Assembly: GCA_964057225.1 (NCBI GenBank)
Contig: OZ059898.1
Location: 7,936,001-8,000,000, forward strand
Reading direction: 5' to 3'
From: Auanema rhodensis
Lineage: Eukaryota; Animalia; Nematoda
Length of the DNA: 64,000 bases
A program made the position numbers and the translations under genes. Shown piece by piece: positions 1 to 7,100 of the stretch. Each line of letters opens with the position of its first letter. Within the stretch, counting starts at the first letter, position 1. Below the pieces are notes generated by a model that saw only the letters and a list, made by a program, of their open reading frames with translations, searched no databases and was not told the DNA's origin.

Positions 1-1347
1 ACCAATAAGACGTTTAACTTAAAGTAAATCATAATGTATAACGAGTCTTCTAATTCTAAAATATTTAAGACCATCCGCACAATGTGCTCAGATTATTGAC
101 CTCTCTGTGGGACCAGTTACACAATTAATTTGGGATAAAACGTCCAGTAACGGATTATTAGCTGTAACTCCGAATTCAAGCAAAATTATGGTATGCTTTG
201 ATGCGCATATATAAAGTTAGACTTGCCTTTTTAGGTGATAGACGCTAGCAATGGCGAGGTTGATTCTTTAGGTGCGTGGACAGGTGGATGTATAACCCGG
301 ATTATACCAGCGCCTGATGGAAAACAATTAGCAGTTTTATATATCGGAAATCTCATAAGGTTGACTAAAGTTGAAAAAAAATTATTTTGTTTCTTTTAGA
401 GTCTATGATAGAACTTCGTGGAGTTCTGAGAAGTGGAATAACTTAGATGGGAGAGCAGTTGATGCTGTATGGTCACCAAATGGAGGTAAGTTTTTTTTTC
501 TGACATTTTTTCTATTTTATCATTTTAGATTGCCTTGTTTTTTCCACTGAAAATAGTCATAAGCTTTTCTCTATTTCTTTCACTCGAAAAGAGATAATAA
601 ACGAAGATGGTCGGACAGAGACGTAAGTTTCTATTTCTAGTTTCATATATTTCAGCATTTTTCAGAAAATTAATAGGTGAATCAGTAGCTCAACCAGTGT
701 ATGATGTTAGTGCTGTTGAATTTGATGCATCAGAGCTCAATGTTCTCAACGCAGTGGAAAGACCTATTCAAATTATCGGAGGCGAAGTTCAATCATTATC
801 TTTAAGTCCTGATGGCCAAAGGCTCACTGTTCAATTCAAACGTACGCTCTATCTGTTTTATATTATAAATTTATGTATTTTAGATAATCCAGAGGTTTTC
901 GCTCTATTTGTTGTTGACTGGTATCCAGTTTTAAGGCTTATTCCAATGTATTTTAGGTGTATTTTACCTTTAATCATTTTGTTTTTATAGTGGGTTGGTG
1001 GAAGCTCCCGCTTATGGTAATGTGGTTATATCCCAATTTGTCCCACAGTTCAACTATGGATCACTTCTCTGCATTGTAATCTCCTTTTTTCTTTAATGTC
1101 TGAATTTATTTCTTTGTAGGTTTGGTCTGGTGGTAAAGTACAATATTTACCTTTAGTTTATGGTAATAATGCTTCCTATGGAGTTGCCGGAAATATATTG
1201 GGCTATAATCCTAATAATTCTAATAATTTTAATAACATATCTCTTTATCAACACTCGATTGATAACTCTTTGAGATCCGTTGATCTCTCAATGAGTTTAC
1301 GGGATTCTCTACATAATGAAACAGGTGCTTCCGGTGATAAACATTAA
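1..1347 (+). CDS. AAAS: Aladin-like WD40 nucleoporin, 5'-truncated, multi-exon
   Basis: Spliced exons (approx. 1-23, 70-190, 235-359, 400-485, 529-622, 666-841, 883-947, 991-1075, 1120-1347) give WD40 repeats with Aladin-type motifs: WSSEKWNNLDGRAVDAVWSPNGDCLVFS, IGGEVQSLSLSPDGQRLTVQFK, QFVPQFNYGSLLCIVWSGGKVQYLPL. TAA at 1345-1347. Confidence 0.85.
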
Positions 1348-1498
1348 CTAATTTTTATTTTTTCCGGGTTATTGAAATGCATGTACATTACTATATGGTA
1401 AATTAAAGCTCTAATTGTTTTTCTATATACAAGAGATCTTAAAAAAGCTCAAAAACTAGCTCAAATACAGAACTGAAGAGCAAGCAGAGAAAAAACTA

Positions 1499-2118
1499 TT
1501 AATAAAGACACGTTTTCTTCATAATATCGAAAAACTCCTGTTCATTAACTTTACCATCGGTACTTCCATGAGATGCTTCTTTAATCATATCGTTTAACTC
1601 TTCAATGGCCAAGTCTTCTCCAAGTTCTTTGGCGACCTAGAAATCAATGTAATAATTATGGGTAAAGAAACTTTGTTAATACCTGTTTGAGATTTTCAAC
1701 TGAAATCCACCCTTTTCCTTCTTTATCAAACAAACGGAAAGCACTTCGCATCTCCTCTAACGACTTATCGGTTTCAGTAGTATCTTTTAAAAGGTCCAAG
1801 AACTCTCCAACATCGATAGAATCGGGATCTTCAAATAAGAAGATTAGAGTTTTTAAACATTATACGATTTACTTTCTTGTCCTTTAACGGTTTTAGATTT
1901 CATATCCTTGATCTTTTTAGTCATTGTCTCGATCTGGGCATTTCTAGGATCAAACCCCAAACCTCTCATCACAAGCTAAATAAAATAATATAAAAAATAA
2001 TCAGAAAAAAATAGCCCACTTTAAGATTAGAAATCTTAAGAAGACTGGGTGAATTCGAATCTAGAAGAGCAAAAGCTGCTTCTACTTCCTCTTTGGTTAC
2101 TTGAAGAGAGTTCGACAT
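1499..2118 (-). CDS. Divergent centrin (EF-hand protein), 4 exons, about 160 aa
   Basis: Spliced product [20 protein letters not shown]...[13 protein letters not shown]...[34 protein letters not shown]...[12 protein letters not shown]. Matches centrin hallmarks MRALGF, NLKRVAKELGE and C-terminal MKKTSLY. TTTAG acceptor 3 nt before the ATG. Confidence 0.88.
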
Positions 2119-2278
2119 GATCTAAACAATAGGTGTAATTAAAAGTTGAAAAAAAGCGAAACAACAATAATAACAGATAATAAGTATTGAGATAATAAAC
2201 TTGTTCAGTTAAAGAAAGAACAGTAAAAAAAATCCTTTAACTAAATATATTATTTAATACGATTTCCTATGTTTATAT

Positions 2279-3452
2279 CTACATGTATAATCTATAAATT
2301 AAAGTTGGAGCATCAACATTAGAGAAAAATGGATACATAGATGTATGATTATGACGACTACGATCACTGAATGAATAGGTAGAATATTGATACGACACTT
2401 CATCTATTTTAATTCCATTTTCTTCTGAAAATAAAAAAAATTGTTGCCATCCAGCTAACGAAAACAGGCAAACCTAATGTATTCCGAAAAGCTTGCAATG
2501 TTTCTGGGTTACGAACAGTACTAGCTACAAAAGCCATAGCTCCTGGTTTTGATGATAATACTTCCCGCAATACAGTACTTAATGGAGGAAGGATGGCTTT
2601 ATCGTAGACAACATCAGCAGCAACAATAATATCCGGAACTTTCTCCAAGTCCTTAATTTGAAAGCTTGACCACTCTAAAGGTATCACATTCACTCGACCA
2701 TTATTCTGCAAAAAAAATAAATATAAAAAATAACCAAATATTATATAATTAGTTTACCTCCATGAAGGATTCAGTGACATTTATCTTTAGTTGTTCCAAA
2801 ACTTTAGGATCGTAATCAGATAAATCTACGCTACATGAAGGAAAAGTTGAAGCTATAGCAATGCCTGTTAATCCACAACCAGCACCCAATTCCAAAATAT
2901 GTTTATCAGAGCAGTCGATGAAAGATGTTACAAGATTAGCTAAGTGGCAAGATGCCTGAATAGCCAGTATGAGATAGAAAAAAAAGAATAAATATACCTG
3001 CCAAATAGAGAGTCCGGTAGTTCCATGACAAAGTTGCTGATTGGATTCACGAATGGCACATCGCACTTTCTTGCCATCGTCGGTGAGATAGAGGCGATAT
3101 GAAAACTCATCGGAGTCACTCATGCATTGTGCAACTGCATCATAAATCTCATCAGGGACCTCGAGCTCTGCTGCTTCTGCCTATATTCGAAGATTGATAT
3201 ACTGTCGCAAAGCAAAAACACACTAATGCCATAAGCTCTTTGAACAAGCTTCTTCGGAAACTCTGACGAACAGGTCTACGATCAAGAATGTGGCTGTTTA
3301 CTACATGAGATATAACATCTAATCTATCTACGCATTTTGCAACTATTTCAGTCGGTATTTTAGTTCCAGAAAAATAGCATCTAGTGAAAACAATAATTTC
3401 CTGAAAATATTATCGTTGCAGTGAAGCAAATTTAACATCTAACCTCTGGCAT
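2279..3452 (-). CDS. EEF2KMT: EEF2 lysine methyltransferase (FAM86A/Efm3 family), 6 exons
   Basis: Seven-beta-strand methyltransferase motifs GTTGLSIWQAS, ILELGAGCGLTG, LSDYD, IIVAADVVYD and ASTVRNPET, preceded by a FAM86-like N-terminal segment (ILDRRPVRQSFRRSLFKELM). 9-nt first exon MPE at 3444-3452; TAG at 2279-2281. Confidence 0.88.
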
Positions 3453-3474
3453 GTCTTTGAATAAAAAACCAGTC

Positions 3475-3940
3475 TCATTCTCTATTCCGTCTATTGAGCT
3501 TGTTATAGAGTTTTTCAACGGACCGGACGTCTAAATGTGTAAGATGTTCAGTTATAAAATAGCAATAAACTAACTATAAGCTGTTTGAGGAGGGAGATAC
3601 TCTGGTCGCTCATATGGAATACCGTAATGTTCAGCTTGAACCAAACGTTGCTCACACTTGTAAATTAACTTACCAATCTGATTTATATCAGACACCTTCA
3701 AGAATTATTCAACTAATTCTAATAACGTAATGAACTCACAGTTTTATTTTCACGGAAAGTCTGTTTTGCTTCTGCGATAATCTCAGCTCTTTCTAAGGAT
3801 GTACTGACTGGATCATGAGCGTTCCAAGTTTTACCTAAAAACATTATATAAAATTGACATCATAATAATTTCTTACCTAGGTTTAGAACTTGTTTGTAAA
3901 GTTGTAGAACGCGTTTTCTATGCGAGAACACGGAAGACAT
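3475..3940 (-). CDS. LYRM1: LYR-motif protein LYRM1, 4 exons, 111 aa (absent from ORF track)
   Basis: Exons 3940-3877, 3834-3740, 3695-3575, 3530-3475 give MSSVFSHRKRVLQLYKQVLNLGKTW...EIIAEAKQTFRENK...EQRLVQAEHYGIPYERPEYLPP...RSVEKLYNKLNRRNRE*. Contains the LYR-like LYK motif, the downstream FR.N motif and the LYRM1-type HY.IPY.RP..LPP motif. Introns are 42-44 nt. Confidence 0.88.
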
Positions 3941-4185
3941 ACATGCAATTTCAGTTTAAAGTTGAAACACCCTCGGTGATCTGTTGAGTAGAACTACACA
4001 GTTGATTGTAAAAACAGTGCATTGAAATAATCAATAGGAAAAAACTAAACTAATTGAAACTTCCGCTAATAAAAATCTTTTATATAGAATGAATATATGC
4101 TTATGGCTATATAAACTGAGAAATGAAAGATCATTAAAAAGAGTCATGATATGAAATGATAGGAAATATGAAAAAAAGTTGAAAA

Positions 4186-7100
4186 TTAAGCAGATTCGAT
4201 AGTAATATTACTTAGAATTTCTAATAGCTGAACGGCTAATTCTCTAACAGACATATCTGGAGAGGAAATAATCAATTTCTTAGCTGATGGGAGAAGAATG
4301 GAAAAAAATTCTTTCATTTCATTGGCAGGTAGATCAAGAAGAAGCTGGAACGGTGCCAAACAAATATCCCGATATGCGAGAAGACGATAAGAATCCGGAT
4401 CGGTCTTTACGAAATATGGATTATCGGTTAAGTTTATCATAAAAACACCTGAACTGATTCTACTGGTTCACTTGAACTGGAATTTATCACGCTCATGAAT
4501 GGATTTTGCCGTTCAATTACTGGTTTCTTGATCGGACGATTAGTTCGAAAAGCTAAAGCACGTATGAAACCTCAACGAAATACATGATAGTAACCTGAAT
4601 ATATATCAGCAATTTCATTTTCAGTGACAACTTTATATAGTTTATCGGCATCTATCTCAACCAATCGAAAATCCAGATGCTAAAAACAAACTGTGATTTT
4701 GAAGCGACTAACGTCAAGTGTGCGTGATTCGATTACTAAGTGACAAAAAAGGAAAACTAACTTGTGTGCGATGCTCACGCATAGCTACAGCCATTCTTCT
4801 AAAAGCAGTTCCACTCTCTATTCTCTTGAATTCAGCTATAATCATATCTAAAGAACGACCTAACTGATGCATAGCTTCAGTACTCCTGCAAAATACAATG
4901 TTGGGAAAATTTGTAAAAATAAAATTTAGTTACTTCGTCATTCTTGCTTGATGAAATAGAGATACAACTTTAATCAAACCAGCAGAAACCAACTGCTTGA
5001 ATAAATTTGGATGTTCTAAATCGCTACATTTGGAAATACAAGCAATAGCTGTAACACTATGATCAAATTCTCTTGCAACCTGAAAGATTTAAGTTTTAAG
5101 AAAATTTAGTTTTAAAATTACTTGGAAAGAAGCATCAAGACAATAATATAGCGAACATCTTGTAGCATTAGTAATTTTCTCTAAAACCTTAAACATTTTG
5201 TCCAGTTATTATTATTCTTTATTTAATTTTAAAATATACTTTTAATGAAGCTGCTTGAGAGAGTACACGAGTCATTTGATGAGGTATTGTTGTTGGAGAA
5301 AGTAATGAACCTATCAATTGCAAAATGACTTGATGTGCTAAAAGCGAGGACACAACATGTTGTAGAGAAATTCTGAAAAAGAAGAAAAAAAAAGAAATTT
5401 CAATTTAAACCGAAGTTTATACCTAAAACGATGTCCATTATTGATGAAAATGAAATCATTGCGACGAGGAGTAGGTGGTTGCTGATCAGCAGATTCTACA
5501 TCCTCTTCATCGGAACTATCTTGATCAAATGTACTTTTCTTCTGTACTTCCACATAAAACACCTAATAAGACATTTATATATTGATTATTTAAAATAATT
5601 TATTTAACCTGTTCAGCTAGAACTCGATCCATCATTGTAATGCTAGCTGTTTTATCAATCAACAATCCACTATCACCGTTACAACGTTCAGCAGTCTCCG
5701 ATGTTACAAGTGAGGTTAGAAGTCTTATTGGATGCAATGTCACAGAGCTAAACACTTAAGGATTATCTTGGTGATTTTGAAGTACAAACCATCCATCCCA
5801 CAGTGCTTTTTGTAAAATAGTCCATTGAAGTTCATTAAAGTTTGCTGAAGTAGTAGAGAGATGACGCAAACATGCTGCACCAACACGACTAAAATCGTTT
5901 GGCTGTCCTGAACATTCTACAGCAACACGACATCCATCAGCCAAAAGTCTGCTGCTCCAAGGAGAATCTGCATATTCAAATATATATTTGATTTGATGAG
6001 TAAAGAAACCTTCATGACCAGTTATAAATTCCAAAACAATTTCTGTACATGTGCCCAAAGCTTGCTTAATATTTCGGCACTCATCCGCTTCTTTCGGACG
6101 TCTAAGCCATTTCTGAACATATGGGAAAAGAAGTGCTGACACACAGAATGCAGCAGTATCAAATCCTAAATATGGAGAGCAAAATACATGTAAACAAGGA
6201 AGAAACGAACCAAAATCTGTGTCTCGAATAGATATCAGCAGTTGATGGATGGACCGCAACAAAGGCGGCTGAACAGATGAAGGAGCAGTAACAAGTGTGC
6301 CACAAAGCTAAACATTCCAATATGGAATAATTCATATGAAAAATAGTTCAAAAAACAAAATAATAGTAACTTAAGAACGCTCACATGCTCAAAGAAAGTC
6401 AAAACAAGCTCAATAGAGGCTGTTTCGTGACAGGCTTTATCTATCCATGAGAGTTCACCACGTGGTACTAAAAACTAGTTGAAAACTTGCCAAAAATATA
6501 AATTTACCATCAAGTTTTCCATCAAGTTTTATGGGACTGGGATCACCTGGATTGTGTGCATAATAACCAGGATCAACAATGGCAGATAACGCTGGAATCA
6601 AAGGAAGGGTTTCAAGTAAACAGTTAACTTGATCATCTACTTCATCTATACTATTAATTCTCAAATCAGCTCTAAAAAAATATAAATTTTGAAATAAAAT
6701 TCATTGAAAATACCTATGAAGCAAATTATGACTAGGACTATGAGGAGTTCTATAAAGATTTAATAAAACAGCATAGGTTGGTTGAATTAAGTGTAATGCT
6801 GCTTCAGATAGTTGACTATCCAGTTCTGTGGTTTCAGTTGATTGTAAGAAATGAATAATACATGCAAAACAGTCCAAAAGTGACCAAGATAGAATACCAC
6901 TGAAAAAAGTAAAAAGATTAAATATATGTTTATAACTTATAGAATAGTTAACAAACCATTTTTTGATATTAAGATATGTACTTATGACATCCAACACAGT
7001 CCAATGAACACTGGCATCTTCAATTGACGATGTTCGAACTGCTCGTAATGTACCAAAAAGAGGTTTCCATGCTAAATCATTCAGGATATTCGCTTAGATT

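What the first reader, a model, noticed from the sequence alone, without database searches (positions are those of the whole stretch)
3444..3580. LYRM1-EEF2KMT junction: 22 nt from stop to start and a dual-frame exon; candidate dicistronic or cis/trans alternative operon switch
Seen: the spliced LYRM1 stop (TGA, 3475-3477) is only 22 nt from the EEF2KMT ATG (3452), with no AATAAA between them. The last LYRM1 exon (acceptor TTTAG, 3531-3535) is also stop-free in a second frame for 26 codons (TSGPLKNSITSSIDGIENETGFLFKD) that runs directly into the EEF2KMT ATG. If the 44-nt intron 3574-3531 is not removed, LYRM1 stops at TAG 3570-3572 just after its conserved core, 117 nt before the next ATG. Established: SL2-type nematode operons typically have about 100 nt between the 3' end of one gene and the next trans-splice site; rare SL1-type, alternative and dicistronic operons exist in C. 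elegans (e.g. tin-9.2/exos-4.1). Inference: the 3531 acceptor, or the weak TTCAAAG at 3455-3461, may switch between cis-splicing (dicistronic mRNA or reinitiation) and SL trans-splicing (monocistronic EEF2KMT). This would couple a mitochondrial LYR protein to eEF2 methylation. A fusion protein needs a phase-0 donor, which I could not find, and a 26-codon open second frame can arise by chance.
Basis: partly seen in the sequence, partly recalled or inferred. Interest (0 to 1): 0.75.

Follow-up and report, generated by a model that had tools for sequence, protein, structure and literature searches.

The report
Two overlapping genes, one worm mRNA
In this nematode the gene for a small mitochondrial LYR protein and the gene for the eEF2 lysine methyltransferase are assembled as one spliced RNA with no processing site between them, and ten other nematode sequences show the two reading frames overlap, a conserved and apparently undescribed two-gene message probably read by ribosomes that skip the first start codon.

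Summary
On the minus strand, the spliced LYRM1-like ORF stops at TGA 3477-3475, 22 nt before the EEF2KMT ATG at 3452. No AATAAA lies between them, and the second frame is open for 26 codons.

RNA assemblies from four runs (one study) each give one contig that removes the 44-nt intron and every other intron and runs from the LYRM1 5' region to the EEF2KMT 3' end. The neighbouring genes sit on separate contigs.

In all 11 nematode sequences compared, the EEF2KMT frame is LYRM1 +1, and its first in-frame ATG lies 59-137 nt upstream of the LYRM1 stop. Eight of the 11 have no later ATG before the conserved N-terminal motif. The LYRM1 AUG always has a pyrimidine at -3, and the stretch between the two AUGs is ATG-poor.

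Best reading: a conserved dicistronic mRNA with overlapping ORFs inside an ordinary operon, translated by leaky scanning (confidence 0.6). A fusion protein is unlikely.

The parts
3980..3981 (-). Candidate SL trans-splice junction for the LYRM1 5' end (acceptor ...CAACAG ends at 3981; the exon starts at 3980)
   Evidence: Sequence. The run X3 contig ends at 3982, 2 nt upstream of the junction, where SL-joined and outron RNAs would diverge (computed from piece lengths). Inferred, not shown.
3877..3940 (-). LYRM1-like exon 1 (ATG 3940-3938; 64 nt; ends in phase 1). The AUG context has T at -3 and T at +4.
   Evidence: (joint 3834|3877).
3740..3834 (-). LYRM1-like exon 2 (95 nt). It holds the only intervening ATG (3816-3814, +1 frame), which opens a 7-codon ORF ending at TAG 3795-3793.
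   Evidence: (weak PF05347 match).
3575..3695 (-). LYRM1-like exon 3 (121 nt, HYGIPYERPEYLPP motif). It contains ATG 3613-3611 in the +1 (EEF2KMT) frame.
3611..3613 (-). First AUG of the EEF2KMT reading frame in the spliced RNA. From here the frame is open through the 3575|3530 junction into EEF2KMT, and it overlaps the LYRM1 ORF by 95 nt.
   Evidence: S. carpocapsae has its ATG at the same codon pair, and the public model starts there.
3531..3574 (-). 44-nt intron (GTTAGT...TTTAG), removed in all four runs
   Evidence: joint 3530|3575 with no ambiguity, one contig per run.
3444..3530 (-). 87-nt dual-frame exon. In the LYRM1 frame it gives 18 codons plus the stop. The EEF2KMT frame is open over all 29 codons.
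   Evidence: Same length and same stop position as in Auanema sp. JU1783.
3475..3477 (-). LYRM1 stop codon (TGA)
3476..3478 (-). Out-of-frame AUG (+2 frame, A at -3). Its ORF runs past AUG 3452 and would hinder use of 3452 on any RNA that contains it.
   Evidence: Read directly from the sequence. The consequence is inferred.
3453..3474 (-). 22-nt spacer between the LYRM1 stop and ATG 3452. It contains the acceptor-like TTCAAAG (3461-3455).
3450..3452 (-).
3401..3443 (-). 43-nt first EEF2KMT intron, removed in all four runs
   Evidence: joint 3399|3443, cut +1.
2279..3400 (-). EEF2KMT/FAM86-like exons 3400-3224, 3180-2998, 2955-2758, 2705-2474 and 2424-2279 (TAG 2281-2279)
   Evidence: PF10294 above its cut-off on two exons; all joints; orthologues.
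2234..2242 (-). 3' end of the two-gene contig in all four runs, about 20 nt after ATTAAA/AATAAT (2258-2249). Probable poly(A) site shared by both ORFs.
2121..2233 (-). Ordinary intercistronic region of 112-120 nt, with no RNA contig over it, before the centrin-like gene (acceptor TGTTTAG, ATG 2118)

Best explanation
LYRM1 and EEF2KMT form one transcription and processing unit inside a larger nematode operon: ARF-GEF, then LYRM1/EEF2KMT, then a centrin-like gene.

The pre-mRNA is cis-spliced at every intron, including the 44-nt one. It is not cut or trans-spliced between the two ORFs. The mature RNA therefore runs from the LYRM1 trans-splice site (about 3980) to the poly(A) site after EEF2KMT (about 2235) and carries both ORFs.

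The EEF2KMT reading frame is the +1 frame of LYRM1. In the spliced RNA it is open from inside LYRM1 exon 3 and has an AUG at 3613, so the two ORFs overlap by up to 95 nt. The next in-frame AUG, at 3452, follows the LYRM1 stop by 22 nt.

EEF2KMT is made by ribosomes that scan past the weak LYRM1 AUG, or that reinitiate after the 7-codon ORF at 3816, and then start at 3613 or, less likely, at 3452.

**Shown:** the anatomy, the splicing, the contiguity in RNA assemblies, and the conservation of the frame relation and the overlap.

**Inferred:** that this RNA is the translated template for EEF2KMT, that leaky scanning is the route, and which AUG is used.
For: **RNA assemblies**
- in each of four runs exactly one contig (1390-1467 nt) covers 2234/2242 to 3982/4060 with all eight introns removed. 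The upstream and downstream genes are on separate contigs, and the ordinary spacer 2124-2233 is uncovered.
- there is no AATAAA between the ORFs, while the EEF2KMT 3' end has ATTAAA/AATAAT.

**Conserved anatomy**
- the gene order LYRM1, EEF2KMT, centrin-like is conserved in seven genome loci from six other genera. Exon lengths 64/95/121/87 are identical to Auanema.
- four independent RNA contigs from other nematodes carry both ORFs spliced together. One of them (L021) begins with the SL1 tail CCAAGTTTGAG upstream of LYRM1.
- in 11 of 11 sequences the EEF2KMT frame is LYRM1 +1, and its first in-frame AUG lies 59-137 nt before the LYRM1 stop. Only the window, Auanema and P. pacificus have any in-frame AUG after the stop and before the conserved motif.

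**Signs of leaky scanning**
- 0-2 ATGs lie between the two AUGs (total 5). Base composition predicts 39.5, and synonymous permutation predicts 8.4 (P = 0.02). All five are +1-frame ORFs of 2-12 codons. ATG density there is about 0.19 per 100 nt against about 1.6 downstream.
- the LYRM1 AUG has a pyrimidine at -3 in 11 of 11 sequences, against 5 of 16 neighbouring genes. In 7 of 11 the first EEF2KMT AUG has A at -3 and G at +4.
- in the 31 nt after the LYRM1 stop, the window and Auanema differ at 14 sites, split 3/2/9 by EEF2KMT codon position.

**Natural control**
- in C. auriculariae no LYRM1 lies in the stretch held around EEF2KMT (1.5 kb each side), and EEF2KMT there has its own AUG behind a strong acceptor.
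Against: - A contig across two genes does not prove a single molecule (tool caveat). The contigs also reach into the outron upstream of LYRM1 in three runs, so unprocessed RNA is present in these libraries.
- Fully cis-spliced dicistronic intermediates are detectable for an ordinary Brugia operon (PMC1657053).
- Short SL tips would be clipped by the assembler, so internal trans-splicing is not excluded.
- The window itself has a plausible AUG (3452) after the LYRM1 stop, preceded by an acceptor-like TTCAAAG.
- AUG 3613 is in a weak context (C at -3).
- The N-terminal extension is poorly conserved as protein: 10-41% identity to the window with no invariant column.
- The four Caenorhabditis sequences closest to C. 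briggsae (L019, L022, L023, L024) are close kin, so the counts overstate independence.
- There is no translation evidence of any kind.
Confidence: 0.6

Rival explanations
1. Internal SL trans-splicing resolves the pair. Some pre-mRNAs are cis-spliced and yield LYRM1 mRNA, whose long 3' UTR is the EEF2KMT sequence. Others receive SL1 or SL2 at 3455|3454 (TTCAAAG) or at the shared acceptor 3531|3530, giving a monocistronic EEF2KMT mRNA translated from AUG 3452.
For: - The genome has canonical SL1 genes and four SL2-family genes.
- An acceptor-like TTCAAAG, behind a U tract, sits 2 nt before ATG 3452. The confirmed acceptor CTTGAAG at 3702-3696 shows that weak sites are used in this species.
- In N. 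brasiliensis, A. duodenale and P. pacificus the shared exon begins with ATG directly after the AG, the classic trans-splice layout. The RNA contig L021 has its ATG at the position where that junction is expected.
- Assembled contigs would lose a 22-nt leader tip, so they cannot argue against this.
Against: - No contig break and no loose end appears at 3454 or 3530 in any of the four runs.
- Trans-splicing at 3530 would place the strong-context out-of-frame AUG 3478 ahead of AUG 3452.
- C. briggsae genomic DNA has no intron at that position, and C. angaria and S. carpocapsae have no AUG downstream of the acceptor. This route therefore cannot serve EEF2KMT there.
- No polyadenylation signal exists for a separate LYRM1 3' end.
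Confidence: 0.3
2. A LYRM1-EEF2KMT fusion protein is made, either by a +1 ribosomal frameshift near the LYRM1 stop or by an alternative splice that joins the two frames.
For: - The frame relation is +1 in all 11 sequences.
- Public annotations contain fused models for A. duodenale, C. briggsae, C. angaria, P. redivivus and T. circumcincta, plus a triple fusion in Caenorhabditis sp. 36.
Against: - The codons at and before the stop differ in every species, so there is no conserved shift site.
- No AG lies 1 nt downstream of the acceptor to shift the frame.
- The A. duodenale model needs a non-GT donor.
- The C. briggsae model removes the conserved F-K-R-Y-F segment through a GTCAGT donor. That donor is absent from three related RNA contigs, which keep the segment.
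- The fused models disagree with one another, as expected if gene predictors are being forced across overlapping ORFs.
Confidence: 0.04
3. This is an ordinary operon junction, and the open second frame is chance. LYRM1 is polyadenylated on its own, and EEF2KMT starts independently at 3452.
For: - A 26-codon open frame is expected by chance in 13-21% of cases.
- ATG 3452 gives an N-terminus of normal length.
Against: - The intron is always spliced in the contigs.
- There is no poly(A) signal or contig end between the ORFs, whereas the true intercistronic region downstream is 112-120 nt and uncovered.
- C. elegans intercistronic regions have a median of 129 bp (PMC7668243).
- The overlap of the frames recurs in all 11 sequences.
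Confidence: 0.05

Closest known systems
Human MOCS2 (MOCS2A/MOCS2B): a bicistronic mRNA with overlapping ORFs read by leaky scanning (PMC9607355)
   Same: - One spliced mRNA carries two full-size proteins in different frames.
- The end of ORF1 overlaps the start of ORF2 (77 bp in MOCS2; 59-137 nt here).
- The proposed route is leaky scanning past the first AUG.
   Different: - MOCS2A and MOCS2B are subunits of one enzyme. A mitochondrial LYR protein and a cytosolic eEF2 methyltransferase have no known link.
- Translation of both ORFs is demonstrated for MOCS2 and is not demonstrated here.
- This pair sits inside a trans-spliced operon, and in most lineages a cis-splice junction lies within or beside the overlap.
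SL2-type nematode operons (C. elegans paradigm; intercistronic median 129 bp, PMC7668243)
   Same: - The genes are co-oriented, tightly packed and co-transcribed.
- The flanking junctions in the window look exactly like this type: 112-120 nt, a poly(A) signal, and a TTTAG acceptor just before the ATG.
   Different: At the LYRM1/EEF2KMT junction there is no poly(A) signal and no spacer. The downstream ORF starts before the upstream ORF ends, so cleavage plus SL2 addition cannot separate two complete ORFs.
SL1-type operons of C. elegans, in which the poly(A) site abuts the trans-splice site (recalled from memory; the primary paper was not available)
   Same: There is essentially no intercistronic space, and 3' end formation and trans-splicing could be mutually exclusive outcomes.
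   Different: - Those operons have a normal AAUAAA and non-overlapping ORFs.
- Here there is no signal.
- In eight of 11 sequences the downstream AUG lies inside the upstream coding region.
azyx-1/zyx-1 overlapping ORFs in C. elegans (PMC10575671)
   Same: A nematode mRNA with two overlapping ORFs, where leaky scanning is proposed to reach the downstream one.
   Different: azyx-1 is a newly found upstream-overlapping ORF of a single gene. Here, both ORFs are old, widely conserved eukaryotic genes that are separate in other animals.
tin-9.2/exos-4.1 dicistronic unit of C. elegans
   Same: Said to be a mature dicistronic nematode mRNA.
   Different: It could not be checked. No paper in the library holds these names together.

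Membership tests
Bicistronic mRNA with overlapping ORFs and leaky scanning (MOCS2 type) | Both ORFs lie on one processed transcript | tested here: met
   One fully spliced contig per run in four runs. Four spliced two-ORF RNA contigs in other nematodes, one starting with the SL1 tail. Caveat: these are assemblies, not single molecules.
Bicistronic mRNA with overlapping ORFs and leaky scanning (MOCS2 type) | The ORF2 start codon lies upstream of the ORF1 stop, in another frame | tested here: met
   AUG 3613 in the +1 frame, with a 95-nt overlap. The same holds in 11 of 11 sequences, with overlaps of 59-137 nt. In the window a second AUG (3452) after the stop leaves the true start open.
Bicistronic mRNA with overlapping ORFs and leaky scanning (MOCS2 type) | Weak context at the ORF1 AUG and few AUGs before the ORF2 AUG | tested here: met
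   Pyrimidine at -3 in 11 of 11 sequences, against 5 of 16 neighbouring genes. 5 ATGs observed against 39.5 by composition and 8.4 by synonymous permutation, P = 0.02. The window has one, which opens a 7-codon ORF.
Bicistronic mRNA with overlapping ORFs and leaky scanning (MOCS2 type) | ORF2 is translated from the bicistronic RNA | not testable with these tools
   No ribosome profiling, proteomics or raw reads were available.
SL2-type operon junction | A poly(A) signal and 3' end for the upstream gene, followed by a spacer of about 50-200 nt | tested here: not met
   No AATAAA and no contig end between the ORFs. The spacer is 22 nt from stop to ATG, or negative if AUG 3613 is the start.
SL2-type operon junction | SL2 joined to the downstream gene | not testable with these tools
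   Contigs cannot show leaders. SL2-family genes exist in the genome.
SL1-type operon junction | AAUAAA shortly upstream of a trans-splice site that coincides with the cleavage site | tested here: inconclusive
   Only AATAGA variants at 3495-3481 and a weak TTCAAAG acceptor at 3461-3455. Leader use is not testable.
LYR-motif family, LYRM1 subfamily | Complex1_LYR domain (PF05347) with the L-Y-K/R tripeptide | tested here: inconclusive
   The window's single exons score below the cut-off (E 0.055 and 0.079). The joined model was not searched. Orthologous intron-free ORFs score above the cut-off (E 2e-11 to 4e-11). The nearest Atlas clusters are named LYRM1 or LYRM1-like, with scores 0.92-0.93.
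EEF2KMT / FAM86 | Methyltransf_16 domain plus the FAM86 N-terminal domain | tested here: met
   PF10294 is above its cut-off on exons 4 and 5 (2e-11 and 1.2e-7). Orthologues carry PF14904 FAM86 and the source name 'FAM86 N-terminal domain-containing'. The window's own N-terminal exon gave no Pfam hit.
Programmed +1 frameshift fusion | A conserved shift site at or before the ORF1 stop | tested here: not met
   The stop codon and the preceding codon differ in all 11 sequences.

The most novel reading that the evidence does not exclude
Across rhabditid nematodes (Caenorhabditis, Auanema, Pristionchus, strongylids, Steinernema, and probably Panagrellus), LYRM1 and EEF2KMT have been locked for a very long time into one mature bicistronic mRNA with overlapping reading frames. 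The amount of the eEF2 methyltransferase made would then be set by how often ribosomes skip the start codon of a mitochondrial LYR protein. In lineages where the shared exon begins with ATG, the same 3' splice site may additionally choose between cis-splicing and leader addition.
Probability: 0.5. Interest if true: 0.65.

Novelty: new member of a known kind. Interest (0 to 1): 0.55.

Why it matters
Nematodes are the textbook case in which polycistronic RNAs are always cut into one-gene messages by trans-splicing. This would be a pair of ordinary, ancient genes that escapes that rule inside a normal operon. It keeps overlapping frames across distant nematode families.

That would give a natural system for studying leaky scanning and dual-coding constraint in animals.

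It also explains why public annotations of this locus disagree. Fused two-gene and three-gene models exist in at least six species, and truncated EEF2KMT models exist in others. The finding gives annotators a concrete correction.

The coupling of a mitochondrial LYR protein to eEF2 methylation is unexplained and may be fortuitous.

Tried and rejected
- **Second copy in the genome:** the window's own genome was searched for a second, diverged copy to compare. Only the locus itself was found.
- **Literature:** searches for R08D7.4, EEF2KMT with elegans, LYRM1 with nematode, exos-4.1/tin-9.2 and R08D7.5/.7/.8 found nothing on this pair. The paper requested as PMC3032929 is not held.
- **Earlier scan notes:** nothing relevant.
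- **Raw reads:** none were served, only assembled contigs. Leaders, RNA ends and relative levels could not be read, and both read tools are now at their cap.
- **Alternative splice giving a fusion:** rejected. No AG lies in the right place, and the donor used by the C. briggsae fused model is not conserved.
- **Frameshift at the stop:** rejected for lack of a conserved site.
- **NAT versus NAC codon choice before G-starting codons:** 5 T to 12 C, against 43 T to 46 C elsewhere. This is a trend only.
- **Protein alignment of the N-terminal extension:** weak conservation, so 'conserved peptide' is not claimed. Only the window, Auanema and Pristionchus share a short T-G-F/M-x-F...P stretch.
- **Joined models:** the joined (spliced) protein models of the window were never sent to any search tool. 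Searches used single exons by reference and the joined step was left out. Exons were concatenated only inside scripts, for frame bookkeeping.
Full report
**1. Observation**

All features lie on the minus strand.

- The LYRM1-like gene has exons 3940-3877, 3834-3740, 3695-3575 and, after a 44-nt intron (3574-3531), 3530-3475, with TGA at 3477-3475.
- The EEF2KMT/FAM86-like gene has its ATG at 3452. Its first exon is 9 nt (3452-3444), followed by a 43-nt intron (3443-3401). Further exons run down to TAG 2281-2279.
- Stop and ATG are 22 nt apart, and no AATAAA lies between them.
- The frame of the ATG is open for 26 codons back to the acceptor.

On its own that open frame is unremarkable. 13% of shuffles of the segment are open, and 18-21% of all 26-codon windows here are open.

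**2. RNA evidence**

Four runs from one study hold the locus. They are recorded only as 'RNA?', but every intron is skipped with GT..AG ends on the minus strand, so they are RNA-derived.

- Each run lays exactly three contigs on 1200-5200.
  - One covers the centrin-like gene and ends at about 2123.
  - One covers the upstream gene and ends between 4064 and 4161.
  - One, of 1390-1467 nt, runs from 2234/2242 to 3982/4060 with all eight introns of LYRM1 and EEF2KMT removed, including 3531-3574.
- No contig ends and no unmatched tail lies near 3440-3530.
- The true intercistronic region after EEF2KMT (2124-2233) carries ATTAAA/AATAAT 20 nt before the contig end. It is 112-120 nt long and is not covered. 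This matches the usual operon spacing: the C. elegans median is 129 bp (PMC7668243).

Caveats:
- A contig across two genes does not prove one molecule.
- In three runs the contig extends into the outron upstream of LYRM1, so unprocessed RNA is present.
- Spliced dicistronic intermediates have been seen by RT-PCR for an ordinary Brugia operon (PMC1657053).
- A 22-nt leader would be clipped by the assembler.

**3.

LYRM1 exon 3 ends in phase 1 for LYRM1, which is phase 0 for the second frame. In the spliced RNA the EEF2KMT frame therefore continues upstream through the 3575|3530 junction. It stays open for 17 more codons above an ATG at 3613-3611, which lies in the P-Y-E codons of the LYRM1 motif H-Y-G-I-P-Y-E-R-P. 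The second frame is not a candidate fusion frame. It is a possible 5' extension of the EEF2KMT ORF that overlaps the LYRM1 ORF by 95 nt.

**4. Relatives**

A profile-free search with EEF2KMT exon 5 found nematode orthologues, and their loci were fetched.

*Synteny and structure*
- The order LYRM1, EEF2KMT, centrin-like gene holds in A. duodenale, N. brasiliensis, Auanema sp. JU1783, C. angaria, P. pacificus, S. carpocapsae and C. briggsae.
- Auanema also shares the upstream ARF-GEF gene and the exon lengths 64/95/121/87.

*RNA contigs from other nematodes*
- Four assembled RNA contigs carry both ORFs spliced together (L019, L021, L023, L024).
- L021 begins with the last 11 nt of SL1 upstream of LYRM1.

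*Frames and start codons*
- In all 11 sequences analysed the EEF2KMT frame is LYRM1 +1.
- It is open from inside LYRM1 exon 3.
- Its first in-frame AUG lies 59-137 nt before the LYRM1 stop.
- The position of that AUG moves between lineages.
  - It lies in the H-Y-G codons (TAT GGN) in Caenorhabditis, Auanema and the strongylids.
  - It lies in the P-Y-D/E codons in S. carpocapsae and the window.
  - It is the first codon of the shared exon, directly after the acceptor AG, in P. pacificus and, as a second AUG, in the strongylids. In L021 it sits where that junction is expected from the cDNA.
- Only the window, Auanema and P. pacificus have any in-frame AUG between the LYRM1 stop and the conserved F-x-R/K-x-Y/F-F motif of the FAM86 N-terminus.

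*Caenorhabditis*
- C. briggsae genomic DNA has lost the last LYRM1 intron, so the two ORFs overlap in the genomic DNA itself. The three related RNA contigs show the same continuous sequence.
- The segment between the LYRM1 stop and the motif varies in length between species while the frame stays open.
- The motif region itself is well conserved.
- In these lineages EEF2KMT cannot be made from an RNA that starts at or after the LYRM1 stop, unless it starts at a non-AUG codon.

*Natural control*
- In C. auriculariae no LYRM1 lies in the stretch held around EEF2KMT (1.5 kb each side). The gene there has its own AUG 23 codons before the motif, behind a strong TTTTTCAG acceptor.

**5. Signs of leaky scanning**

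- The LYRM1 AUG has a pyrimidine at -3 in 11 of 11 sequences, against 5 of 16 for neighbouring genes in the same loci.
- In 7 of 11 the first EEF2KMT-frame AUG has A at -3 and G at +4.
- Between the two AUGs (226-277 nt) there are no ATGs in seven sequences, one in three, and two in one.
  - All five are in the +1 frame and open ORFs of only 2-12 codons.
  - The total of 5 compares with 39.5 expected from base composition and 8.4 from synonymous permutation (P = 0.02).
  - ATG density is about eight-fold lower than in the sequence that follows.
- Much of the depletion is at the amino-acid level: LYRM1 has no internal Met in this part in any species.
- The four sequences closest to C. briggsae are close kin, so the number of independent lineages is nearer eight.
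- In the 31 nt after the LYRM1 stop, where only EEF2KMT could be coding, the window and Auanema differ at 14 sites, split 3/2/9 by EEF2KMT codon position. This suggests that codons upstream of ATG 3452 are translated. The sample is small, and the extension as a whole is poorly conserved.

**6. The window specifically**

Two in-frame AUGs are candidates.

- AUG 3613 has a weak context. It is reached after the weak LYRM1 AUG and one 7-codon ORF (3816-3793), which should allow reinitiation.
- AUG 3452 has G at -3 and gives a normal-length N-terminus. On any RNA containing 3478 it is preceded by an out-of-frame AUG in a strong context whose ORF overlaps it. AUG 3452 is therefore favoured only if a leader is added at 3455|3454.
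- Reinitiation after the full 111-codon LYRM1 ORF, 22 nt downstream, is possible but unusual without special elements.

I rate the bicistronic, leaky-scanning reading at 0.6, internal trans-splicing at 0.3, and a fusion and an ordinary junction at about 0.05 each.

**7. Identity of the genes**

- *EEF2KMT:* the Methyltransf_16 domain is above its cut-off on two exons. Orthologues are named FAM86 and carry PF14904.
- *LYRM1:* the window's single exons match LYR models only weakly. Intron-free orthologous ORFs match PF05347 at about 1e-11. The nearest Atlas clusters are named LYRM1.
- The joined spliced models of the window were not sent to any search tool.
- The organism is an SL1- and SL2-using nematode: canonical SL1 genes in a large array and four SL2-family genes. 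The genome is 181 Mb and the window is 28% GC. The closest available relative at this locus is Auanema.

**8. Comparison and novelty**

The arrangement works like human MOCS2, where 77 bp encode the end of one protein and the start of another and both are read by leaky scanning (PMC9607355). It also resembles the azyx-1/zyx-1 overlap in C. elegans (PMC10575671).

It fails the defining features of an SL2-type junction, having no poly(A) signal and no spacer. It is at best inconclusive for an SL1-type junction.

No paper in the library mentions this gene pair in nematodes. Public annotations treat it inconsistently:
- fused two- or three-gene models in A. duodenale, C. briggsae, C. angaria, P. 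redivivus, T. circumcincta and Caenorhabditis sp. 36;
- truncated 306-308-residue models in other Caenorhabditis;
- an overlapping model in S. carpocapsae.

I class it as a new member of a known kind, with moderate interest. WormBase could not be consulted, so curators may already know the C. elegans case.

Noticed in passing
G000:C3:6741531-7099372 (loci L001-L008); G000:C5, C1 and C3 (L009-L012): A large array of at least 51 SL1 RNA genes, with neighbouring matches often 252 or 504 bp apart. They carry the canonical leader GGTTTAATTACCCAAGTTTGAG but score below Rfam's SL1 cut-off (54-62 bits against 75). Four dispersed SL2-family genes score above their cut-off.
   Followed up: partly
window 3938-3944, minus strand; L018 about 2409-2415: The LYRM1 start is ATGTATG. 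An upstream ATG, 4 nt before the real one, opens an 8-codon ORF that overlaps the LYRM1 AUG. P. pacificus has the same layout (ATGCATG, 5 codons). This could also carry ribosomes past the LYRM1 AUG.
   Followed up: no
P0002, P0004, P0024, P0151, P0159, P0165, P0167 (public protein models): Public annotations hold fused LYRM1-EEF2KMT models in A. duodenale, T. circumcincta, P. redivivus, C. angaria and C. briggsae, and a LYRM1-EEF2KMT-centrin triple fusion in Caenorhabditis sp. 36. The junctions differ between models and use non-conserved or non-GT donors. They are probably predictor artefacts caused by the overlapping ORFs.
   Followed up: partly
L022:1702-2050 (C. briggsae) against L017:3278-3326 (C. 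angaria): C. briggsae has lost the last LYRM1 intron, which C. angaria and all other genera keep, so there the two ORFs overlap in uninterrupted genomic DNA. The related RNA contigs L019, L023 and L024 read the same way.
   Followed up: yes
L025:1077-1760 (C. auriculariae): EEF2KMT has no LYRM1 in the stretch held around it (1.5 kb each side). It has its own ATG behind a strong TTTTTCAG acceptor, a natural example of the pair being unlinked.
   Followed up: partly
window 4186-5200, minus strand: The upstream gene ends at TAA 4188-4186. It is the C-terminus of a Sec7/BIG-type ARF-GEF, 65% identical over 65 residues to the Auanema neighbour. Its RNA contigs run on for 255 letters unlike the window beyond 5187, most likely an intron whose next exon lies past the stretch that was laid.
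   Followed up: partly
window 3696-3702, minus strand: The confirmed cis-splice acceptor of LYRM1 exon 3 is CTTGAAG, far from the TTTTCAG consensus. Weak acceptors are therefore used in this species.
   Followed up: no
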